A stretch of 64,000 bases of DNA. Source: Podarcis melisellensis (Eukaryota). Of the stretch, positions 714-32,100 are shown piece after piece. The notes below the pieces were generated by a model. The model was not told where the DNA came from. It saw nothing but the letters and a program-made list of their open reading frames with translations, and ran no database searches. The translations under genes and the position numbers were made by a program. The first letter of the stretch is position 1. Every line of letters starts with the position of its first letter. The stretch lies in assembly GCA_964234715.1 (NCBI GenBank), contig OZ174276.1; one strand, written 5' to 3'.

Positions 714-1011
714 TAACATAACATAACAAGAGGAGTTTCCTATGTACCTATTAACTTTTAATCAGGTAGGCCCTAAATTCCATTGAGCCTGTGCCGGGCA
801 AAAGTGCAGGGTTCCAAAGACACATTTCCACATGTAAATCTTCTATAATTTCCTTTACTTTCTCACGTGCCCACCACTGCAAGTCCAATTCATTCAGAAA
901 GGCTTGGTTTTATATGCATTTTTACTCAGAATCAAGGTTCACTGAATTTAGTGGAGCTGAGGAGGTCTTTCCTAAATAAGCATGCAAAGGATGGCAGGTT
1001 TAGTTTCTTAC

Positions 1012-1047
1012 CATGGCTGGATCCTTGGGTACCACTTTGGTCTGCAA
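1012..1047 (-). CDS. Coding exon 2 of the same cytokine (36 nt, LQTKVVPKDPAM)
   Basis: 109-nt intron 1. Acceptor ttgttttgtattttgctag, donor ATG|GTAAGA, phase 0/0. A tiny second exon after a short first intron is typical of CSF2/IL3/IL5. VPxD resembles avian GM-CSF as I recall it. Confidence 0.8.
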
Positions 1048-1156: not shown

Positions 1157-1297
1157 CTGTGTCAAATCTTTCAGACGATTCTGTGTTTCTATAAGCCCCT
1201 CTATACCGGTAAGTTCTTTTCTCGCAGTCGGATTGTGTGCTGGTCTGCAATTGATGTATGCTCCAAGGCAAAGGATGATCAAACAGTGGGGCAGCAT
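1157..1297 (-). CDS. Coding exon 1 of a GM-CSF/IL-3/IL-5-family cytokine, most like CSF2 (signal peptide + helix A)
   Basis: ACCACA-ATG start. 47 codons MLPHCLIILCLGAYINCRPAHNPTARKELTGIEGLIETQNRLKDLTQ, then phase-0 donor CAG|GTATGC. Hydrophobic leader. LIETQNRL carries a Glu placed like the beta-common-binding Glu of helix A. Directly downstream of a CSF2-type promoter and divergent from ACSL6. Confidence 0.85.
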
Positions 1298-1357
1298 TGT
1301 GGTGATAGCAGTGTGCTTCAGTTTCCTTGTTCTGAACCTGGTAAGACTTTGATGCTC

Positions 1358-1466
1358 TTATATATACACATGAAGCTAAAGGAAATGATTAATATCTCAC
1401 CACAAAAGTCAAGCATACCCAACGGAGGTGGAGGGGTGGGAAATTACCTTGAATAATGGAATCTCC
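1358..1466 (-). promoter_or_regulatory. GM-CSF-type proximal promoter: CK-1, kB, CACCC, RUNX, CLE0, TATA
   Basis: Minus strand, in order: GGAGATTCCAT (1456-1466), GGTAATTTCCC (1438-1448), CCCACCCCTC (1431-1440), TTTTGTGGT (1399-1407), ATTAATCATTTCCT (1380-1393), TATATATAA (1358-1366). Same elements and order as the human CSF2 promoter. Confidence 0.88.
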
Positions 1467-1599
1467 TAGCTGCTTATCTGATGCTCGGGTGCATATGATT
1501 TGTTGTGAAGAATGCTTGAATTTTAAAGGGAAATGTATACGTATATGGGCACAGAGATAAGTTCAATTGATTTTAGTGAGGAGTTAAGCATGCAATAGT

Positions 1600-2450
1600 A
1601 CATAAGAACACAAGAAGAGCTTGTTGGATCTGCCCAATGGCCCATCTTGTCCAGCATCCTGGTCTTACAATGCCAACCAAATGCCTACAAGAAACTCATA
1701 AGCCGGACCCGAGCACAAGAGTGTAATCCCTACAGTTTCTAGCAACAGATACAGTGGTACCTCAGGTTAAGAACTTAATTGGTTCTGGAGGTCCATTCTT
1801 AACCTGAAACTGTTCTTAACCTGAGGTACCACATTAGCTAATGAGGCCTCCCGCTGCCGCCGCGCAATTTCTGTTCTCATCCTGAGGTAAAGTTCTTAAC
1901 CTGAGGTACTATTTCTGGGTTAGCAGAGTCTGTAACCTGAAGCATCTGTAACCTGAGGTACCACTGTATTCAGAAGCATCTAACCATGGAGGCAGAACAT
2001 AGTTTAGCCATTGATATCCTTATCTTCCATGGAATGGTCTAACTCTCTTTTAAAACTATCTGAGTTGCTTGCCGTCACTGTGTCCTGTGGGAGCACGTTC
2101 CATACTTTAACTTACTATCTGCCCTGAATCTTCAAGCTTTTAAGCTTCCTTGTATTTTCATAAGTTATTAAAAGAGGAGAAAACGGTGTTATTAAAAGAG
2201 GAGAAAAACATTTCTCTATCCACTTTCTCTGTGCCCTGCATCCTTTTTATAAACTTTTATCTTGTCACCTCTAACTCACCAAAAATGATCAAGGGCATGG
2301 AAGAACTCCACTATGAGGAAAAGGTTGCAGCATTTTTACAAAAAAGCTGAAAGGCTTCAACCTTTCCTCAAAGGGAAGTCGCTCCATCCCATTGATCATT
2401 TTGGTTGCCCTTTTCTGGATGGTGTGCCCTGTGTCCTACTTTTACAATGG
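1600..2450 (-). mobile_element. Degenerate CR1 LINE 3' end, interrupted by a mariner-type MITE
   Basis: acataagaac tail and antisense CR1 3' motifs (ggcccatcttgtccagcatcctg; gatcattttggttgccctt). Confidence 0.6.
1752..1966. mobile_element. Tc1/mariner (Tigger/pogo-like) MITE, copy 1
   Basis: TIR CAGTGGTACCTC...GAGGTACCACTG flanked by TA. Seven copies in the window. Confidence 0.85.
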
Positions 2451-12306: not shown

Positions 12307-13602
12307 CACACTGGGTCAATACTGGGATGGATCAGGGCAGGACTGTGGAGAGGTTGGGACTGCACAATTGCATCAGTGGAGGCAATCACAGATTTGCATG
12401 GTCCAGGTCTAACCTGCTCTCCATTTCCACTGCACTACTCTGGCTCTCCATCATATGTTATCTTCCTTCCAGGGGCTTTCCAGGTGGTTGTTCTGCTGCA
12501 TGAAGAACTGTCAGTTGTAACTTAAATGCTGCGCGTAAAATCAGCATTTCCCCCGAAGTATCAGCCAATATCATCTCACTGGAAAAAGAAAAGCAATTCT
12601 GTTACCCAAATGCCACATGAAAACTACCATATCTAGCTGTGGTTTTGTGAGTATCACAGCCGTTCAGTGGCTAGTTTCCATGACATAGTGAATGACCGGA
12701 ATATGATTCTTTCCACCACTAAGGCCTGGCATTTGGGAAATGTTTAAGAAACAATGTCATGTCTTAAAATCTGTTTCTGCCATTGTTTTAACAGGCTGAG
12801 TGTACCATCCAACGGGAAGGAATCATCTGCATGGGGGAAGACATGACTGGTAGGCATGTATAGTAAAGTTATAGCAGAAATGTGTTGCTTGCATTACCAT
12901 AAATAAGTCAAGTCTGTGAGAAAAGGTGCAAAATAATGCTGTGTAGCCACTGGTGTGTGTGGAAGATGATGGGAAACATCAGCTCTCTTCCACAGCATTG
13001 CCATGCAACATAATAAATAAATAAATTGGTTTTGTTTTTGTTTTTAATTTATGTGCTGTTCGCTTCCTACCTCAAGCCATGGAACGTTCATTTACCTAGG
13101 TTAATTTTAAAAAGACAGGGCAAAGCATAATCTCTCAAGCACTTTTGTCTCTCCTTCCACTGTAAAATGCTTGCAAATGAAACTGTCCTTTCTCATGACA
13201 ATCTGTTGGAAGGACAAGAGATTCAGTCTGGCTTCTCTCGCTTTGGACAAACTTCACTCAGGGTCAAACTGGACCCCATTATATGTATATTTGTATTTAA
13301 CATGCAGCCTTTTCAAAGAATTTTGCATTTCAAAGAAAACGCAAATAACATCAGCTACTGAAGGCAATAATTATCAAAACTATGGCAGGAGACTGTCTCT
13401 CTCTGTGTGTGTGTGATTTAATTATTTTCTCCTCATCAGCTTCCCAGAGGAAAATTCTTCATCCCAAGCCATTCCTCCCTTACACTGGGAGGAAATCCCC
13501 ATGAGCAACAATGGGGAATTTCCTCTTGATGCAAATACCAGCTTCAGAGGGGATTTTCCTCAGGGTTGCAGCAGGAGAGGAAATGGTTAAATCTCTCTCT
13601 CT

Positions 13603-15844: not shown

Positions 15845-17693
15845 AGATTTAATTCAGTTTTGTGTAGTGTGAATATGTATGTGAATGATTCTGGTGGTTG
15901 CGTTATGTGGTTTTTTTGTAATATTTATGGTTTTTATGCTATATTGTAATTATGTTGCGTTTTGATGTATCTTGATAAGCTTTAGTGCTTTGTATATGAT
16001 TTGTAATTATGTTACTTAAAATGTGGATATATGAGGAGCATTATTTTTGGTTTTGAATGTGAAATTTGTACTGTGTTTTCTTAAATGGAATTGTTTTTGT
16101 TGAGATCTGTAAAAGTATGAAGCAGTATATCAATTAAATAAACAAATTCATCTTGTCATGAAGCCACTCACAAGCAGGTCAGTGCATTTGTGAAATGCTA
16201 TGCTGCTGCCCCCCTCCAATAAAAAAAAACCCACCCAAATGCTTGACAACTTTGCAGCAAACAAAAATATTGGAAAAGTAGGATAAAGCATTTATTCCCA
16301 GGGCAGCTGACATGCAACAGTAAGAATAAAAAGAAGCAGTGCCATAAAAATGGCAGGACAAAAACTATAGCAGGAAGAAAAAAATTCCACTAAAATTCTG
16401 GGAGAAATAAACACCTTCTCATTTGGTGATGAGAAGACAGAGTAAGCATCATTTAAATAATAAATTAACAACAACATCTCACACTTTCACCCATACTCAG
16501 TAGCCCCAGAATGAAAAAGTTCTGTATCCTATTCAAAGCGGAAGACACACCCTAATCCTCTTCATCTATGATTTATTCTATAGGTAAAGGCATAGGAAAA
16601 TCACACAGAGCCAGGCTGAAGGTTGACAGCCCCAGTGGTCATATATGACGTATAGGCAGGTCCTTCTGAGAGGAAAGCATTAGTGGACTAGATATATAGC
16701 CCAGTGGCTCAACAGTGTATTTGCAGCTTTTCTTGGCAAACACTCTGACTCATTTCCTCTGCAGGTCATCCGAAACCTGTACTAAATCTAGCCCAAAGAA
16801 GGGTTCTAGTGAATTCTAAAGCTTGTTACTATACTTGGTTTGCTTTGGTTTAATTATCGTCTATAGATAAAGTCAAATGACACGCCAAAAATAAACTAGC
16901 TTAACAGTCCATATAGATATTAATTCCTCCCGGTAGGCAGCAGCAACACACCTGCCAGGAGGTCAGGTAAGCCCCAGCCTGTCATCTGCTGCTGCCCATA
17001 GTTAAGCAAACGAATTCATTCCCACAAGATGTAGCAGAAAACTTCTTTTGGTGGGCTATGATTTTAAATTTTTACATCCCCCCTCCCTTGGGAAAGGAGC
17101 TGAAAGTATTAAGAAGAACAAAAAGAGAGATTTATAAATGCACAGTGTGATTTCTCAGTTTTATGGCTGTGCACAGCAACCCTCTCAATCCAGGGCTCTG
17201 ACCTGAATTAGAGACCCCAAATCAATTAAATGGTGGGGCTAATATTTAATGAGGGTTTTTTTAAAAAAACCCTTTATGATGCAGAGGTGGGGGGGAGGTG
17301 ACACTGCCCCTTTCCTTCTCCTCCCATCCATACTGCAGAGAGCAACAGGATTCAGTCCCTGCGGGAAACATGTTGGCAAAATAGATCCCTGTAGCCAGCA
17401 GGACTGCACTCTTGGTGTGCAATTCTCAGCTGCTGTGTCAGGCCTGCTGGGCCTCCCTCTCATTTCTTTATACCCAGTGTGTGTCCCAGCTTGGTGTGGT
17501 TTGGGGCCCTGCTGTCTTTTCCACCACCAGCAAACATTTCTGAGCAGGGACCAAAACCTGCTTCTCTGTCTCAATAACCCTCATGCCAAATTGGGCAACC
17601 TTATATCTTCAGAGGAATCCATATTGGTGCAGCATGGAATCATCATGTCAAAACGGTCAACATCACCCCAAATTGGGTGGCGACATCTTCAGA

Positions 17694-19094: not shown

Positions 19095-19230
19095 CAGGCA
19101 TAGGCAAATTCGGCCCTCCAGATGTTTTGGGACAACAACTCCCATGATCCCTAGCTAACAGGACCAGCGGTCAGGGATGGTGGGAACTGTAGTCCTAAAA
19201 CATCTGTAGGGCCGAGTTTGCCTATGCCTG
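19095..19230. mobile_element. Palindromic hAT-type MITE
   Basis: CAGGCATAGGCAAA...TTTGCCTATGCCTG fold-back. Degenerate relatives near 34940-35040, 35566-35692, 56250-56350. Confidence 0.8.
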
Positions 19231-19233
19231 ATA

Positions 19234-19459
19234 CACTGATACCTTGGGTTAAGTACTTAATTCGTTCCGGAGGTCCGTTCTTAACCTGAAACTGTTCTTA
19301 ACCTGAAGCACCACTTTAGCTAACGGGGCCTCCTGCTGCTGGCGCGCTGCCGGAGCATGCTTTCTGTTCTCATCCTGAAGCAAAGTTCTTAACCCGAGGT
19401 ACTATTTCTGGGTTAGCAGAGTCTGTAACCTGAAGCGTATGTAACCTGATGTACCACTG
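19234..19459. mobile_element. Tc1/mariner MITE, copy 2
   Basis: Same family as 1752. TA-flanked, inserted 3 bp from the hAT MITE end. Confidence 0.85.
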
Positions 19460-20447
19460 TATTCATATTTTAGCTCTCAGTCCAAATAGCAAAGACTCCT
19501 ATAGACTTCAGATGAAATTGCATTACTGGTTTCAAACAGAAGATGTCACTTTCTTCAAATGCGTGGAACAAGGAAAATCAACTTCCTGCAAATCAAGCAA
19601 AATGTAATTCTTTGGTCAATTTCCAATTTGACCCTTTGACGTTTTGCCCTGTGGAGCTTGAAATTGTGACCAGCTATATCTGCAGGGAATTATTGCTTTC
19701 CATACCCAGGCCTCACAGGGGGGGGGGGGAGTTGGCAGGTTTCGAATAAGGAAACAGTATTTGCAACCCTGCACATGTTTACTTAGAAATAAGCTCCATT
19801 GAGTTTAATGAGGTTTGCAGCTTGGTAGGCAAGTCCTCTCCACCACCTTCAACATGGACTTTCCCCTCAGCTCCCACTGTAGGCAGCTGTGCTCTGGTGG
19901 GTCCTGAGCTAGGAACAGAATTACATTTGATGGAAACATCACTATCCATGGTCTTGGTTTTTCTAAAACCTCAATGGCGAACCTCCAGTTTATCATTAAG
20001 TGCTCCCTGGTTCCAAATCCTCATAGACTGCATTTCTTCCTGAATCTGTATTGCTTCAGCAGAAAGAGTTGAGAATCCATCTTGTCATAACATTGCTATA
20101 AATATCCCTGAAAAGAGAACATTCCCAAGTCAACCATTTTCTTATTGGCATTCATAAAAGGAAGAGGTTTATCTGAATCTAGCCTGCAGCACTTAAATTT
20201 GCTATAGTGCTGGTAGTTCACTGTTGCCCAGAGTTCTAATGCTGTAACATAGATATCATGTTCCCAAAGCAAATACCTGCCATTCTACTAAGGGCATCAT
20301 GTTCATTTATTGAACAACAGCAGTGTATATTAAACAGATATAAGCAAAATTCTAAGTGGAGTTCCAAATGTACAAATCAACATCAAAACGCCAAAGCAAT
20401 ATCGTGTGAGCAATACAAAAATTCAGTAGCACAGGAATCAAGGAAAG

Positions 20448-30556: not shown

Positions 30557-30790
30557 CAGTGGTAATTTGGGTTACATATGCTTCAGCTTACATACGCTTC
30601 AGGTTACAGACTCCGCTAACCCAGAAATAGTGCTTTAGGTTAAGAACTTTGCTTCAGGATGAGAACAGAAATCGTGCTCCGGTGGCGCAGCAGCAGCAGG
30701 AGGCCCCATTAGCTAAAGTGGTGCTTCAGGTTAAGAACAGTTTCAGGTTAAGAACAGACCTCTGGAATGAATTAACCCGAGGTACCACTG
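30557..30790. mobile_element. Tc1/mariner MITE, copy 3
   Basis: Same family, opposite orientation to copies 1 and 2. TA-flanked. Confidence 0.85.
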
Positions 30791-31049
30791 TATTGGCTCA
30801 CTCCGCAGCAGCTGGCCTGGCTTTGTAATGTCCGAGACCAGTTGTAGAGACCCCAAAGCATATATTTGACCACTGCAGTCTTAGGAGGCAGTAGCCTCTG
30901 GCAGCTAATTGTGGGCGTCAGGAAAGCGCAACAAACTGGCTCCCTAATGCATCATTACAGTATTTTTATTCTCAGGGAGAAATGCTTTGTGGGGTCTTTT
31001 ATTTTTTTCATGTCTGAGGTGCCAGGAGAGCAGCTATTTGGTAACTGAA

Positions 31050-32100
31050 CTTGAAGGGGAGGCGAGAGCGTTTGCTGCTTCGCCTCGTGCCTGGGGCCTG
31101 CTCTGAGGCGACTCCCAGCCTCTTTGCCTGTAAAGCGCCTGGCTTCTTTTGACCTTTGCCCTCCTGCAAGGCGGACTAGCGGCGCCTTCTTGGGCCTCCC
31201 GCTGCCTGCCTCCTGCGCCTCAGCCGGACTCCCCATGGGGGGCGGCGGGCCAAGGCGAGGACGGGGGAGAGAAAGGAGGGCCGAGAGCTGAGCGTCGATG
31301 TCTGCCGCCTTGTACGCATGCACCGCGGCGGCAGCACGCGCGAGCCTGGCATCCTCTTAGCGCCGCCAAGCCGGGACGCGGCCTCGCCTTCTCCAAGAGG
31401 AGCCGGTGCAAAGAAGGGCGGCGGGTGCGCGGCTAAAAATAACCTCCTCCTCTGCTGCTGCTGCGGGCGGGCGGGCGGGCGGGCTTGCGCCTGGGAGCAG
31501 CGAGAGCCAGCCAGTCCCCGTCGCCGCTGCCTCCACTGCTGCTGCTCCCTCAGTCACTGCAGTGAGTTTGCTGCAGTCCCCCCCTCAAGCTGCGCTCTCG
31601 CTTCAGGCCGCCCATGCTGCAGCCGGCTCCAGCAGGCATGCTCACCTTCTTCCTCGTGTCTGGTGGCTCCATCTGGCTCTTCGTGGGTAAGTCAGCCTCG
31701 GCGCTCGCTCGCTCGCTCGCTCCCCTCCCCGCCATCCCGCTCCTTCGCTTTCCTACGGCTTCTCTCCCCCCCTCCCCACCTATCACGGGCGCCGCTTCCC
31801 TGCGAGGGAAAACGGAACAAAAGCGGAAAGAGACGGCGGGTGTGCGCGGGGAGGCTCCTTTTTGGAAATGACCTCGATCCAACCCCGCACACCTCTCCCG
31901 GCCTCCATGGAAGCGGCTCGTCGGCGCGTCCCGCTGCTGCTTTGAGCTGCTGCTTCTCTCGGATCTCCTGGACATGAGCGCCGTCGTTGGGATGCGTTTC
32001 CCCCCAGACCCTCCGGAAGGACCAGGGCAGGAGAAGAGGAAGGCTGCGAGGGATGCTGCTGCCTTCGATGTCATCCTTCTGCGGTATTGGGCCCTATTGT
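31050..32100. promoter_or_regulatory. ACSL6: CpG island / ACSL6 promoter
   Basis: Abrupt GC- and CpG-rich block with GC boxes, an NRF1-like ACGCATGCAC (about 31314) and MEF2 consensus CTAAAAATAA (31433-31442). Confidence 0.85.
31638..31686 (+). CDS. ACSL6: First coding exon of long-chain acyl-CoA synthetase 6
   Basis: Encodes MLTFFLVSGGSIWLFV+G, then donor G|GTAAGT. The human ACSL6 long isoform begins MLTFFLVSGGSLWLFVE (from recall). Neighbouring cytokine gene fits the synteny. Confidence 0.92.

What the first reader, a model, noticed from the sequence alone, without database searches (positions are those of the whole stretch)
1358..1466. GM-CSF promoter grammar conserved between lizard and mammals
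CLE0 ATTAATCATTTCCT matches the human CSF2 element as I recall it. CK-1 (GAGATTCCA), kB, CACCC/GC box, RUNX (TTTTGTGGT) and TATA keep the same order, while the protein is barely recognisable. This favours CSF2 over IL3 identity and suggests NF-kB/AP-1/ETS/NFAT/RUNX control predates the sauropsid-synapsid split. The promoter may be a better probe than the protein for finding orthologues.
Basis: partly seen in the sequence, partly recalled or inferred. Interest (0 to 1): 0.72.

Follow-up and report, generated by a model that had tools for sequence, protein, structure and literature searches.

The report
Lizard GM-CSF gene promoter, mammal-like
[quoted passage not shown] It most likely is that gene's switch, kept for about 300 million years while the protein changed beyond recognition.

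Summary
All six motifs lie on the minus strand at 1467-1354, in the stated order, 60-170 nt upstream of an ATG (1297). That ATG opens a 47-codon signal-peptide exon ending at a consensus splice donor.

- All match colinearly.
- The summed score for the promoter chunk is 47. The best other chunk in the window scores 36, and the maxima of 120 dinucleotide shuffles average 35.1 +/- 1.3 (z about 9).
- CLE0 is 14/14 identical.
- Human strings from -157 to -467 do not match, so conservation is confined to the proximal module.

Every protein search on the exon pieces was blank, so the promoter does identify the gene where the protein cannot.

CSF2 identity is likely but incomplete. No IL3 or IL5 promoter, bird or other squamate sequence could be obtained.

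Verdict: a real orthologous promoter, a new member of a known kind, of moderate interest.

The parts
1457..1467 (-). CK-1 / CD28 response element-like block AGGAGATTCCA
   Evidence: 11/11 identical to the core of the published human CSF2 string CCAGGAGATTCCACA (PMC5811468 Table 1; alignment). CK-1 is defined as part of the CD28 response region in PMC2193861.
1438..1452 (-). CK-2-like TCAAGGTA plus kB-like site (GGTAATTTCCC; + strand GGGAAATTACC)
   Evidence: 10/12 identical to human AGGTAGTTCCCC. One mismatch from the 11-mer GGGAAATTCCC. CK-1 to kB start-to-start spacing is 17 nt, against 16 nt in human.
1424..1440 (-). CACCC / CT-rich box (Sp1/KLF-type) CCCACCCCTCCACCTCC
   Evidence: 11/13 identical to human TTCCCCCGCCTCC within TALE target G2 (PMC3995891 Table 2; alignment). 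It sits where the Sp1 site of the CD28 response region lies.
1397..1404 (-). RUNX/CBF site TGTGGTGA
   Evidence: Fits the TGTGGNNN core. The mouse promoter primer has TGTGGTCA at the same place, 10 nt (lizard 11 nt) before ATTAATCA.
1380..1393 (-). CLE0 composite element ATTAATCATTTCCT (AP-1-like TTAATCA abutting ETS/NFAT core TTTCC)
   Evidence: Exact and unique in the window. The first 8 nt equal the mouse primer ...CACCATTAATCA. The last 10 nt equal human ATCATTTCCT from the NFAT motif CAGAGGAAATGAT (alignment).
1354..1373 (-). TATA box TATATATAA (1366-1358) with conserved flanks TGTGTAT...TAAGAGC
   Evidence: 16/20 ungapped identity to the human TALE G1 target TCCTCTGTGTATTTAAGAGC. The difference is mainly a TA expansion.
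1298..1334 (-). Predicted transcription start (about 1334-1333, CA) and 5' UTR of about 36 nt; inferred, not observed
   Evidence: In human the end of AAGAGCT lies 19 nt from the TSS. The equivalent lizard base is 1353. The predicted UTR has no upstream ATG, and the start context is ACCACAATGC.
1157..1297 (-). Exon 1 coding part: 47 codons, signal-peptide-like N-terminus, phase-0 donor CAG|GTATGC
   Evidence: It is the only TATA-plus-signal-peptide first-exon candidate on the minus strand of the whole window. No family or homologue was found.
1012..1047 (-). Candidate 36-nt exon 2 (ag|TTGCAG...GCCATG|gtaaga); uncertain
Evidence: There is no transcript evidence. The rest of the gene runs off the left edge of the window.
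31000..32100 (+). CpG island and probable ACSL6 first coding exon (ATG about 31639, MLTFFLVSGGSIWLFV, donor gtaagt); synteny anchor
Evidence: GC is 0.53; sequence. The peptide resembles the ACSL6 N-terminus as I recall it, which was not checked with a tool.

Best explanation
This is the proximal promoter of the wall-lizard orthologue of CSF2 (GM-CSF), read on the minus strand.

From about -131 to -25 relative to a predicted start near 1334 it carries the same ordered module as the mammalian gene:
- a CD28 response region (CK-1, a kB site and a CACCC/Sp1-type box);
- a RUNX site directly 5' of the composite AP-1-like/ETS-NFAT element CLE0;
- a TATA box with conserved flanks.

By analogy with mammals, NF-kB/Rel proteins would bind CK-1 and kB and open chromatin. 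NFAT with AP-1 (or an ETS factor with AP-1) would bind CLE0 in response to calcium and kinase signals. RUNX1/CBFbeta would provide lineage competence. TBP would start transcription about 30 nt downstream of the TATA box, giving a 36-nt leader before the signal-peptide exon.

Shown here: the sequence, its order, its statistical excess, its confinement to the proximal module, and an intact first exon.

Inferred: factor binding, inducibility, the exact start site, and CSF2 rather than IL3 identity.
For: - Motifs and coordinates.
- Published comparators:
  - human CK-1 and kB strings (PMC5811468);
  - human TALE targets with distances to the TSS (PMC3995891);
  - human NFAT motif (PMC2588514);
  - mouse primer spanning RUNX and CLE0 (PMC2377420).
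- Architecture statements: CD28RR = CK-1 + kB + Sp1 within +1 to -100 (PMC2193861). Functional Runx1 sites exist in the GM-CSF promoter (PMC2952845).
- All six strings align colinearly at 1467-1354.
- The joint score is 47, against at most 36 elsewhere in the window and at most 39 in 120 shuffles. Scrambled queries reach at most 35.
- The CD28RR 32-mer alone has its best hit in the window here; 0-3 of 200 shuffles reach it.
- Negative control: human strings at -157 to -467 and a mouse upstream primer show nothing above background.
- An intact exon 1 with a consensus donor lies directly downstream.
- The segment is unique, not a repeat.
- Position and orientation relative to the probable ACSL6 start fit the mammalian ACSL6 / IL3 / CSF2 arrangement (the mammalian gene order is from my own knowledge).
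Against:
- The encoded peptide matches no GM-CSF family model or protein. Gene identity therefore rests on the promoter and on synteny.
- No IL3, IL5 or KK34 promoter and no bird, turtle or second squamate sequence could be compared.
- The module is about 25-27 nt longer than in human. Roughly 13 extra nt lie between the Sp1-type box and RUNX, and 8-10 between CLE0 and TATA. This could change cooperativity.
- The kB-like site departs from the decamer consensus.
- The 5' half of CLE0 is documented here only for mouse.
- The published strings cover about 85 nt, not the whole mammalian promoter.
- In mammals IL3, not CSF2, is the gene nearest ACSL6. No second cytokine gene was found between this gene and ACSL6.
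Confidence: 0.78

Rival explanations
1. This is the promoter of the lizard IL3 gene, of a single undivided IL3/CSF2-like gene, or of another beta-common-chain cytokine (IL5/KK34 family). It would resemble CSF2 because these paralogues share CK-1/CK-2 and CLE0-type elements.
For: - In mammals IL3 lies between ACSL6 and CSF2 (my knowledge). No other cytokine first exon was found between this gene and the probable ACSL6 start.
- CLE0 is described as shared by the GM-CSF, IL-4 and IL-5 genes (title of Miyatake 1991, cited).
- The protein gives no family assignment.
Against: - All four blocks that match come from CSF2 and cover the whole proximal promoter colinearly, including non-motif flanks such as AGGAGATTCCA, TCA(A)GGTA and TGTGTAT..TAAGAGC.
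- The combination of a CD28RR with CLE0 is, to my knowledge, specific to CSF2.
- IL5 is not next to ACSL6 in mammals.
Confidence: 0.12
2. It is a conserved-looking relic: the promoter of a CSF2 gene that is decaying or already a pseudogene in this lizard.
For: - No transcript evidence.
- The downstream exons could not be defined. The reading frame after the candidate exon 2 meets stops at the first acceptor tried.
- The gene is absent from the protein catalogues searched.
Against: - Exon 1 keeps an ATG in good context, a signal peptide, an open frame and a consensus donor.
- Retention of a 14/14 CLE0 and an 11/11 CK-1 over this evolutionary distance implies ongoing constraint.
- Fast-evolving short cytokines are commonly missed by annotation.
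Confidence: 0.07
3. It is a chance cluster of short, common immune-gene motifs.
For: Each motif or published string taken alone has equal or better matches elsewhere in the window.
Against: - The joint colinear score has z about 9 against both shuffled windows and scrambled queries. No other chunk comes within 11 points.
- It lies exactly upstream of the only TATA-plus-signal-peptide exon candidate on that strand.
Confidence: 0.01

Closest known systems
Human and mouse CSF2 (GM-CSF) proximal promoter: CD28 response region, RUNX site, CLE0, TATA
   Same: - The same elements in the same order and orientation.
- CK-1 core 11/11, CLE0 14/14 and the RUNX core are identical. The TATA flanks are conserved.
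- CK-1 to kB spacing is 17 vs 16 nt; RUNX to CLE0 is 11 vs 10 nt.
- A short leader precedes a signal-peptide exon that ends in a phase-0 intron.
   Different: - About 25-27 nt longer overall, through insertions between the Sp1-type box and RUNX and between CLE0 and TATA.
- The Sp1 GC box is replaced by a CACCC/CT-rich box.
- The kB site is an 11-mer variant.
- The TATA box is expanded to TATATATAA.
- Sequence upstream of CK-1 is unrelated.
- The encoded protein is not recognisably GM-CSF.
Human GM-CSF upstream enhancer (717-bp BglII fragment, 3 kb upstream; NFAT/AP-1 sites and the GM450 RUNX palindrome)
   Same: The window holds candidate distal inducible elements: a consensus NFAT/AP-1 composite at 16746-16761 and a triple-kB/octamer cluster at 13460-13590.
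   Different: They lie 12-15 kb upstream, not 3 kb. No RUNX palindrome of the GM450 type occurs in 1-31 kb. Homology to the mammalian enhancer was not shown.
CLE0-type elements of the IL4 and IL5 promoters
   Same: A composite AP-1-like plus ETS/NFAT core placed close to the TATA box. The element is described as shared by three lymphokine genes (citation).
   Different: No IL4 or IL5 string could be retrieved for comparison. Those genes lack the CK-1/kB/Sp1 region (my knowledge) and lie elsewhere in the cluster.

Membership tests
CSF2 (GM-CSF) proximal promoter | CD28 response region upstream of the TSS: CK-1, then a kB site, then an Sp1-type box | tested here: met
   Defined in PMC2193861. 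The lizard blocks lie at 1467-1424 in the same order. The 32-mer's best hit in the window is here.
CSF2 (GM-CSF) proximal promoter | RUNX/CBF site immediately 5' of CLE0 | tested here: met
   Lizard TGTGGTGA lies at 1404-1397, 11 nt before ATTAATCA. Mouse has TGTGGTCA 10 nt before it.
CSF2 (GM-CSF) proximal promoter | CLE0 composite element sequence | tested here: met
   14/14 identity to the overlapping mouse and human strings. The 5' half of the human element was not documented in the text retrieved.
CSF2 (GM-CSF) proximal promoter | TATA box with a short leader to the initiator ATG | tested here: met
   The human G1 target aligns 16/20 at 1373-1354. Transferring the -19 anchor gives a TSS near 1334 and a leader of about 36 nt.
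CSF2 (GM-CSF) proximal promoter | Drives a gene that encodes a GM-CSF family protein (Pfam GM_CSF) | tested here: inconclusive
   Pfam, PDB, word and full HMMER searches on the exon pieces gave nothing. Only pieces of 41-59 residues could be searched, the gene is cut by the window edge, and the spliced model was not joined.
CSF2 (GM-CSF) proximal promoter | Genomic position in the ACSL6 / IL3 / CSF2 / P4HA2 interval, transcribed away from ACSL6 | tested here: inconclusive
ACSL6 identity rests on a 16-residue peptide I recognise from memory. IL3 and P4HA2 were not seen.
CSF2 (GM-CSF) proximal promoter | Induction by TCR-type signals (PMA plus ionomycin), cyclosporin A sensitivity, NF-kB dependence | not testable with these tools
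   Needs reporter, EMSA or ChIP experiments.
CSF2 (GM-CSF) proximal promoter | Transcription start about 30 nt downstream of the TATA box | not testable with these tools
IL3 proximal promoter | IL3-specific elements | not tested
A CK-1-like pattern GAGRTTCCM occurs only once in 1-31 kb, at this promoter.

The most novel reading that the evidence does not exclude
The whole proximal CSF2 promoter module (CD28RR, RUNX, CLE0, TATA) is an amniote-wide element about 300 million years old that has outlasted recognisable protein similarity. It could therefore serve as a sequence probe to find unannotated CSF2 genes across reptiles. As a corollary, this lizard may have no IL3 between CSF2 and ACSL6, meaning squamates may have reshaped their beta-common-chain cytokine set. 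A recent survey also lists IL5RA among the orthologues not retrieved in squamates.
Probability: 0.55. Interest if true: 0.55.

Novelty: new member of a known kind. Interest (0 to 1): 0.45.

Why it matters
- It anchors an otherwise unrecognisable and apparently unannotated squamate cytokine gene to a well-studied mammalian one.
- It offers a practical way to find fast-evolving cytokine genes: search for the promoter, not the protein.
- It implies that coupling GM-CSF to NF-kB, NFAT/AP-1 and RUNX signalling was already in place in the amniote ancestor.
- It yields a short, testable set of lizard elements for reporter and binding assays.

That cytokine promoters can be more conserved than their coding regions is an established idea, so this is a useful instance and not a new principle.

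Tried and rejected
- **Reads.** I also sent short motif strings of 10-18 nt to the paper search. I report this so a person can judge it.
- **Protein route to orthologous loci.**
  - Pfam on exon 1 and on ORF 876-754 found no family.
  - A word search with the 59-residue ORF found no candidate.
  - The full HMMER search with exon 1 found only two unrelated repetitive proteins.
  - The PDB sequence search gave only chance hits to internalin and HIV protease.
  - As a result, no CSF2 locus of another species could be fetched with the look-up of encoding contigs.
- **Old primary papers.** Masuda 1993, Tsuboi 1994, Miyatake 1991 and Johnson 2004 are not held.
- **Literal paper searches.** The full CLE0 13/14-mer gave only irrelevant hits. 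Shorter overlapping strings succeeded.
- **Collection scans.** I did not scan metagenome or other DNA collections with the promoter pattern. Hits would most likely be host contamination, possibly human, which I may not keep or compare. No human contig was fetched. The human and mouse comparators are short strings printed in papers.
- **Second cytokine gene.** Scans for a second first exon (IL3) between 1.5 and 31 kb found nothing credible.
- **ACSL6.** I looked for further ACSL6 exons in 31-64 kb by peptide patterns and found none.
- **Enhancer.** No GM450-type RUNX palindrome was found.

Full report
**What is in the sequence.**
The finding lies on the minus strand. Reading 5' to 3' on that strand:
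- CK-1 GAGATTCCA at 1465-1457;
- a CK-2-like TCAAGGTA running into a kB-like GGTAATTTCCC at 1448-1438;
- a CACCC/CT-rich box at 1440-1424;
- TGTGGTGA at 1404-1397;
- ATTAATCATTTCCT at 1393-1380;
- TATATATAA at 1366-1358.

The next ATG is at 1297. It opens 47 codons (MLPHCLIILCLGAYINC..., signal-peptide-like) that end at a consensus donor, CAG|GTATGC, at 1157/1156 in phase 0. In a crude scan of the whole window, this is the only minus-strand ATG that combines an upstream TATA box with a signal-peptide-like open frame. The segment 1300-1620 is single-copy in the window; SINE-like repeats begin at 1748.

**Replacing memory with published strings.**
I could not fetch any orthologous locus (see limits below). 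Instead I recovered short mammalian CSF2 promoter strings printed in held papers:
- Human CCAGGAGATTCCACA, and two bases further TCAGGTAGTTCCCCC, from a binding-site table for gene 1437 (PMC5811468).
- Human TALE targets (T)AGTTCCCCCGCCTCCCT ending at -69 and (T)CCTCTGTGTATTTAAGAGCT ending at -19 (PMC3995891).
- A human NFAT motif CAGAGGAAATGAT, which is ATCATTTCCTCTG on the coding strand (PMC2588514).
- A mouse promoter primer GAGTTCTGTGGTCACCATTAATCA (PMC2377420).

The architecture is stated in words in two papers. [quoted passage not shown] PMC2952845 reports functional Runx1 sites in the promoter, the consensus TGTGGTCA/TGTGGTTT, and an inducible enhancer 3 kb upstream.

**The comparison.**
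All six strings align to the lizard segment, in the mammalian order:

| String | Identity | Lizard coordinates |
|---|---|---|
| CK-1 | 11/11 | 1467-1457 |
| kB | 10/12 | 1449-1438 |
| kB/Sp1 | 11/13 | 1442-1430 |
| RUNX plus 5' CLE0 | 19/24, one gap | 1410-1386 |
| 3' CLE0 | 10/10 | 1389-1380 |
| TATA region | 16/20 | 1373-1354 |

- CLE0 is identical over all 14 bases to the overlapping mouse and human strings.
- Non-motif flanks are shared too: AGGAGATTCCA, TCA(A)GGTA and TGTGTAT...TAAGAGC.
- Local spacings are nearly the same. CK-1 to kB is 17 vs 16 nt, and RUNX to CLE0 is 11 vs 10 nt.
- The lizard module is about 25 nt longer overall. The insertions lie between the Sp1-type box and RUNX and between CLE0 and TATA.
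- On the + strand the kB-like site reads GGGAAATTACC, one mismatch from the palindromic kB sequence GGGAAATTCCC quoted.

**Is it more than chance?**
Taken singly, no. Each 13-24-mer has an equal or better match somewhere else in the 128 kb of both strands.

Taken jointly, yes.
- I merged overlapping strings into four non-overlapping queries and summed their local scores in 170-nt chunks. The chunk 1520-1351(-) scores 47.
- The best chunk anywhere else in the real window scores 36. The maxima of 120 dinucleotide-preserving shuffles average 35.1 +/- 1.3, highest 39, giving z about 9.3.
- Scrambling the queries gives 25.8 +/- 2.3 on the same chunk, highest 35.
- The CD28 response region 32-mer alone has its best window-wide hit here; 0 to 3 of 200 shuffles reach it, depending on scoring.
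- As a negative control, human strings from -157, -280, -370 and -467 and a mouse upstream primer show nothing above background upstream of 1467. Conservation is therefore confined to the functionally defined proximal module, as expected for true homology under constraint.

**Which gene?**
The protein does not help.
- Pfam finds nothing in exon 1 or in the next plausible ORF.
- The word search finds no candidate.
- The full HMMER search returns only two unrelated repetitive proteins.
- The PDB sequence search gives only chance hits.

The gene also runs off the left edge of the window.

Synteny helps partly. A CpG island at 31.0-32.1 kb carries, on the + strand, an ATG exon encoding MLTFFLVSGGSIWLFV with a gtaagt donor. 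I recognise this from memory as the ACSL6 N-terminus. The cytokine gene is thus transcribed away from ACSL6, as IL3 and CSF2 are in mammals (gene order from my own knowledge).

In mammals IL3 lies nearer to ACSL6 than CSF2 does. I found no second cytokine first exon between 1.5 and 31 kb. Position alone therefore cannot separate CSF2 from IL3. The promoter does: every matching block is from CSF2, and together the blocks span its whole proximal promoter. I put CSF2 orthology near 0.8. A rival at about 0.12 is IL3, an undivided IL3/CSF2-like gene or an IL5-family gene. A decaying gene is at about 0.07.

**How it most likely works.**
These steps are inferred from the mammalian literature:
- Rel/NF-kB proteins bind CK-1 and the kB site, stabilise an Sp1/KLF factor on the CACCC box and recruit remodelling activity.
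- NFAT with AP-1, or an ETS factor with AP-1, occupies CLE0 after calcium and kinase signalling.
- RUNX1/CBFbeta binds next to it.
- TBP binds the TATA box.

Transferring the human -19 anchor puts the start at about 1334-1333 (a CA). It gives a 36-nt leader without an upstream ATG and with an A at -3. None of the binding, induction or start-site steps was observed.

**Limits.**
- No human contig was fetched or compared. The human comparators are short strings printed in papers.
- I did not scan public DNA collections with the promoter pattern, because hits would probably be host (possibly human) contamination.
- No bird, turtle, crocodilian or second squamate sequence was available. "Predates the sauropsid-synapsid split" therefore rests on parsimony from one lizard and two mammals.

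**Novelty.**
This report adds a documented, statistically tested comparison. The principle that cytokine promoters can outlast protein similarity is not new. I found no paper in the held library on a squamate CSF2 gene or promoter. I rate it a new member of a known kind, interest about 0.45.

Noticed in passing
window 13460-13590 (mainly minus strand): A dense cluster sits about 12 kb upstream of the promoter. It holds three strict kB decamers (GGGGATTTCC, GGGAATTTCC, GGGATTTTCC) within about 60 nt, an octamer ATGCAAAT and a CLE0-like TTTAACCATTTCCTC, bracketed by CA/GA microsatellites. It may be an inducible enhancer.
   Followed up: partly
window 16746-16761: TGACTCATTTCCTCTG on the + strand is a consensus AP-1 site fused to the same TTTCCTCTG tail as the human CLE0 string, with 12/12 identity to TCATTTCCTCTG. 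It is a textbook NFAT/AP-1 composite, 15.4 kb upstream of the promoter. No credible ORF or gene start lies next to it.
   Followed up: partly
window 1500-31000: No second TATA-plus-signal-peptide first exon was found between the CSF2-like gene and the probable ACSL6 start. IL3 is therefore undetectable here: lost, too divergent, or lacking these features.
   Followed up: partly
window 31000-32100: A CpG island (GC 0.53) holds a + strand exon encoding MLTFFLVSGGSIWLFV with a gtaagt donor, probably ACSL6 exon 1. No further ACSL6 exon was recognised up to 64 kb, so the first intron would exceed 32 kb.
   Followed up: partly
window 754-888 (minus strand): This ORF follows an acceptor-like cttgcag. 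It encodes ...KVKEIIEDLHVEMCLWN..., which loosely recalls, from memory, the human GM-CSF stretch around the first conserved cysteine. It could be a downstream exon of the gene. It has no database support.
   Followed up: partly
window 1748-1972, 19230-19465, 30583-30775: Copies of one SINE-like repeat (86-92% alike), containing GGTACCTCAGGTTAAGAAC, occur at these three places. The nearest copy marks the upstream limit of unique promoter sequence.
   Followed up: no
literature (PMC13005343): A 2026 survey of squamate gene loss lists IL5RA among orthologues not retrieved in squamates, with high divergence and conserved synteny. It does not mention CSF2. This bears on how the beta-common-chain cytokine system evolved in this lineage.
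   Followed up: no
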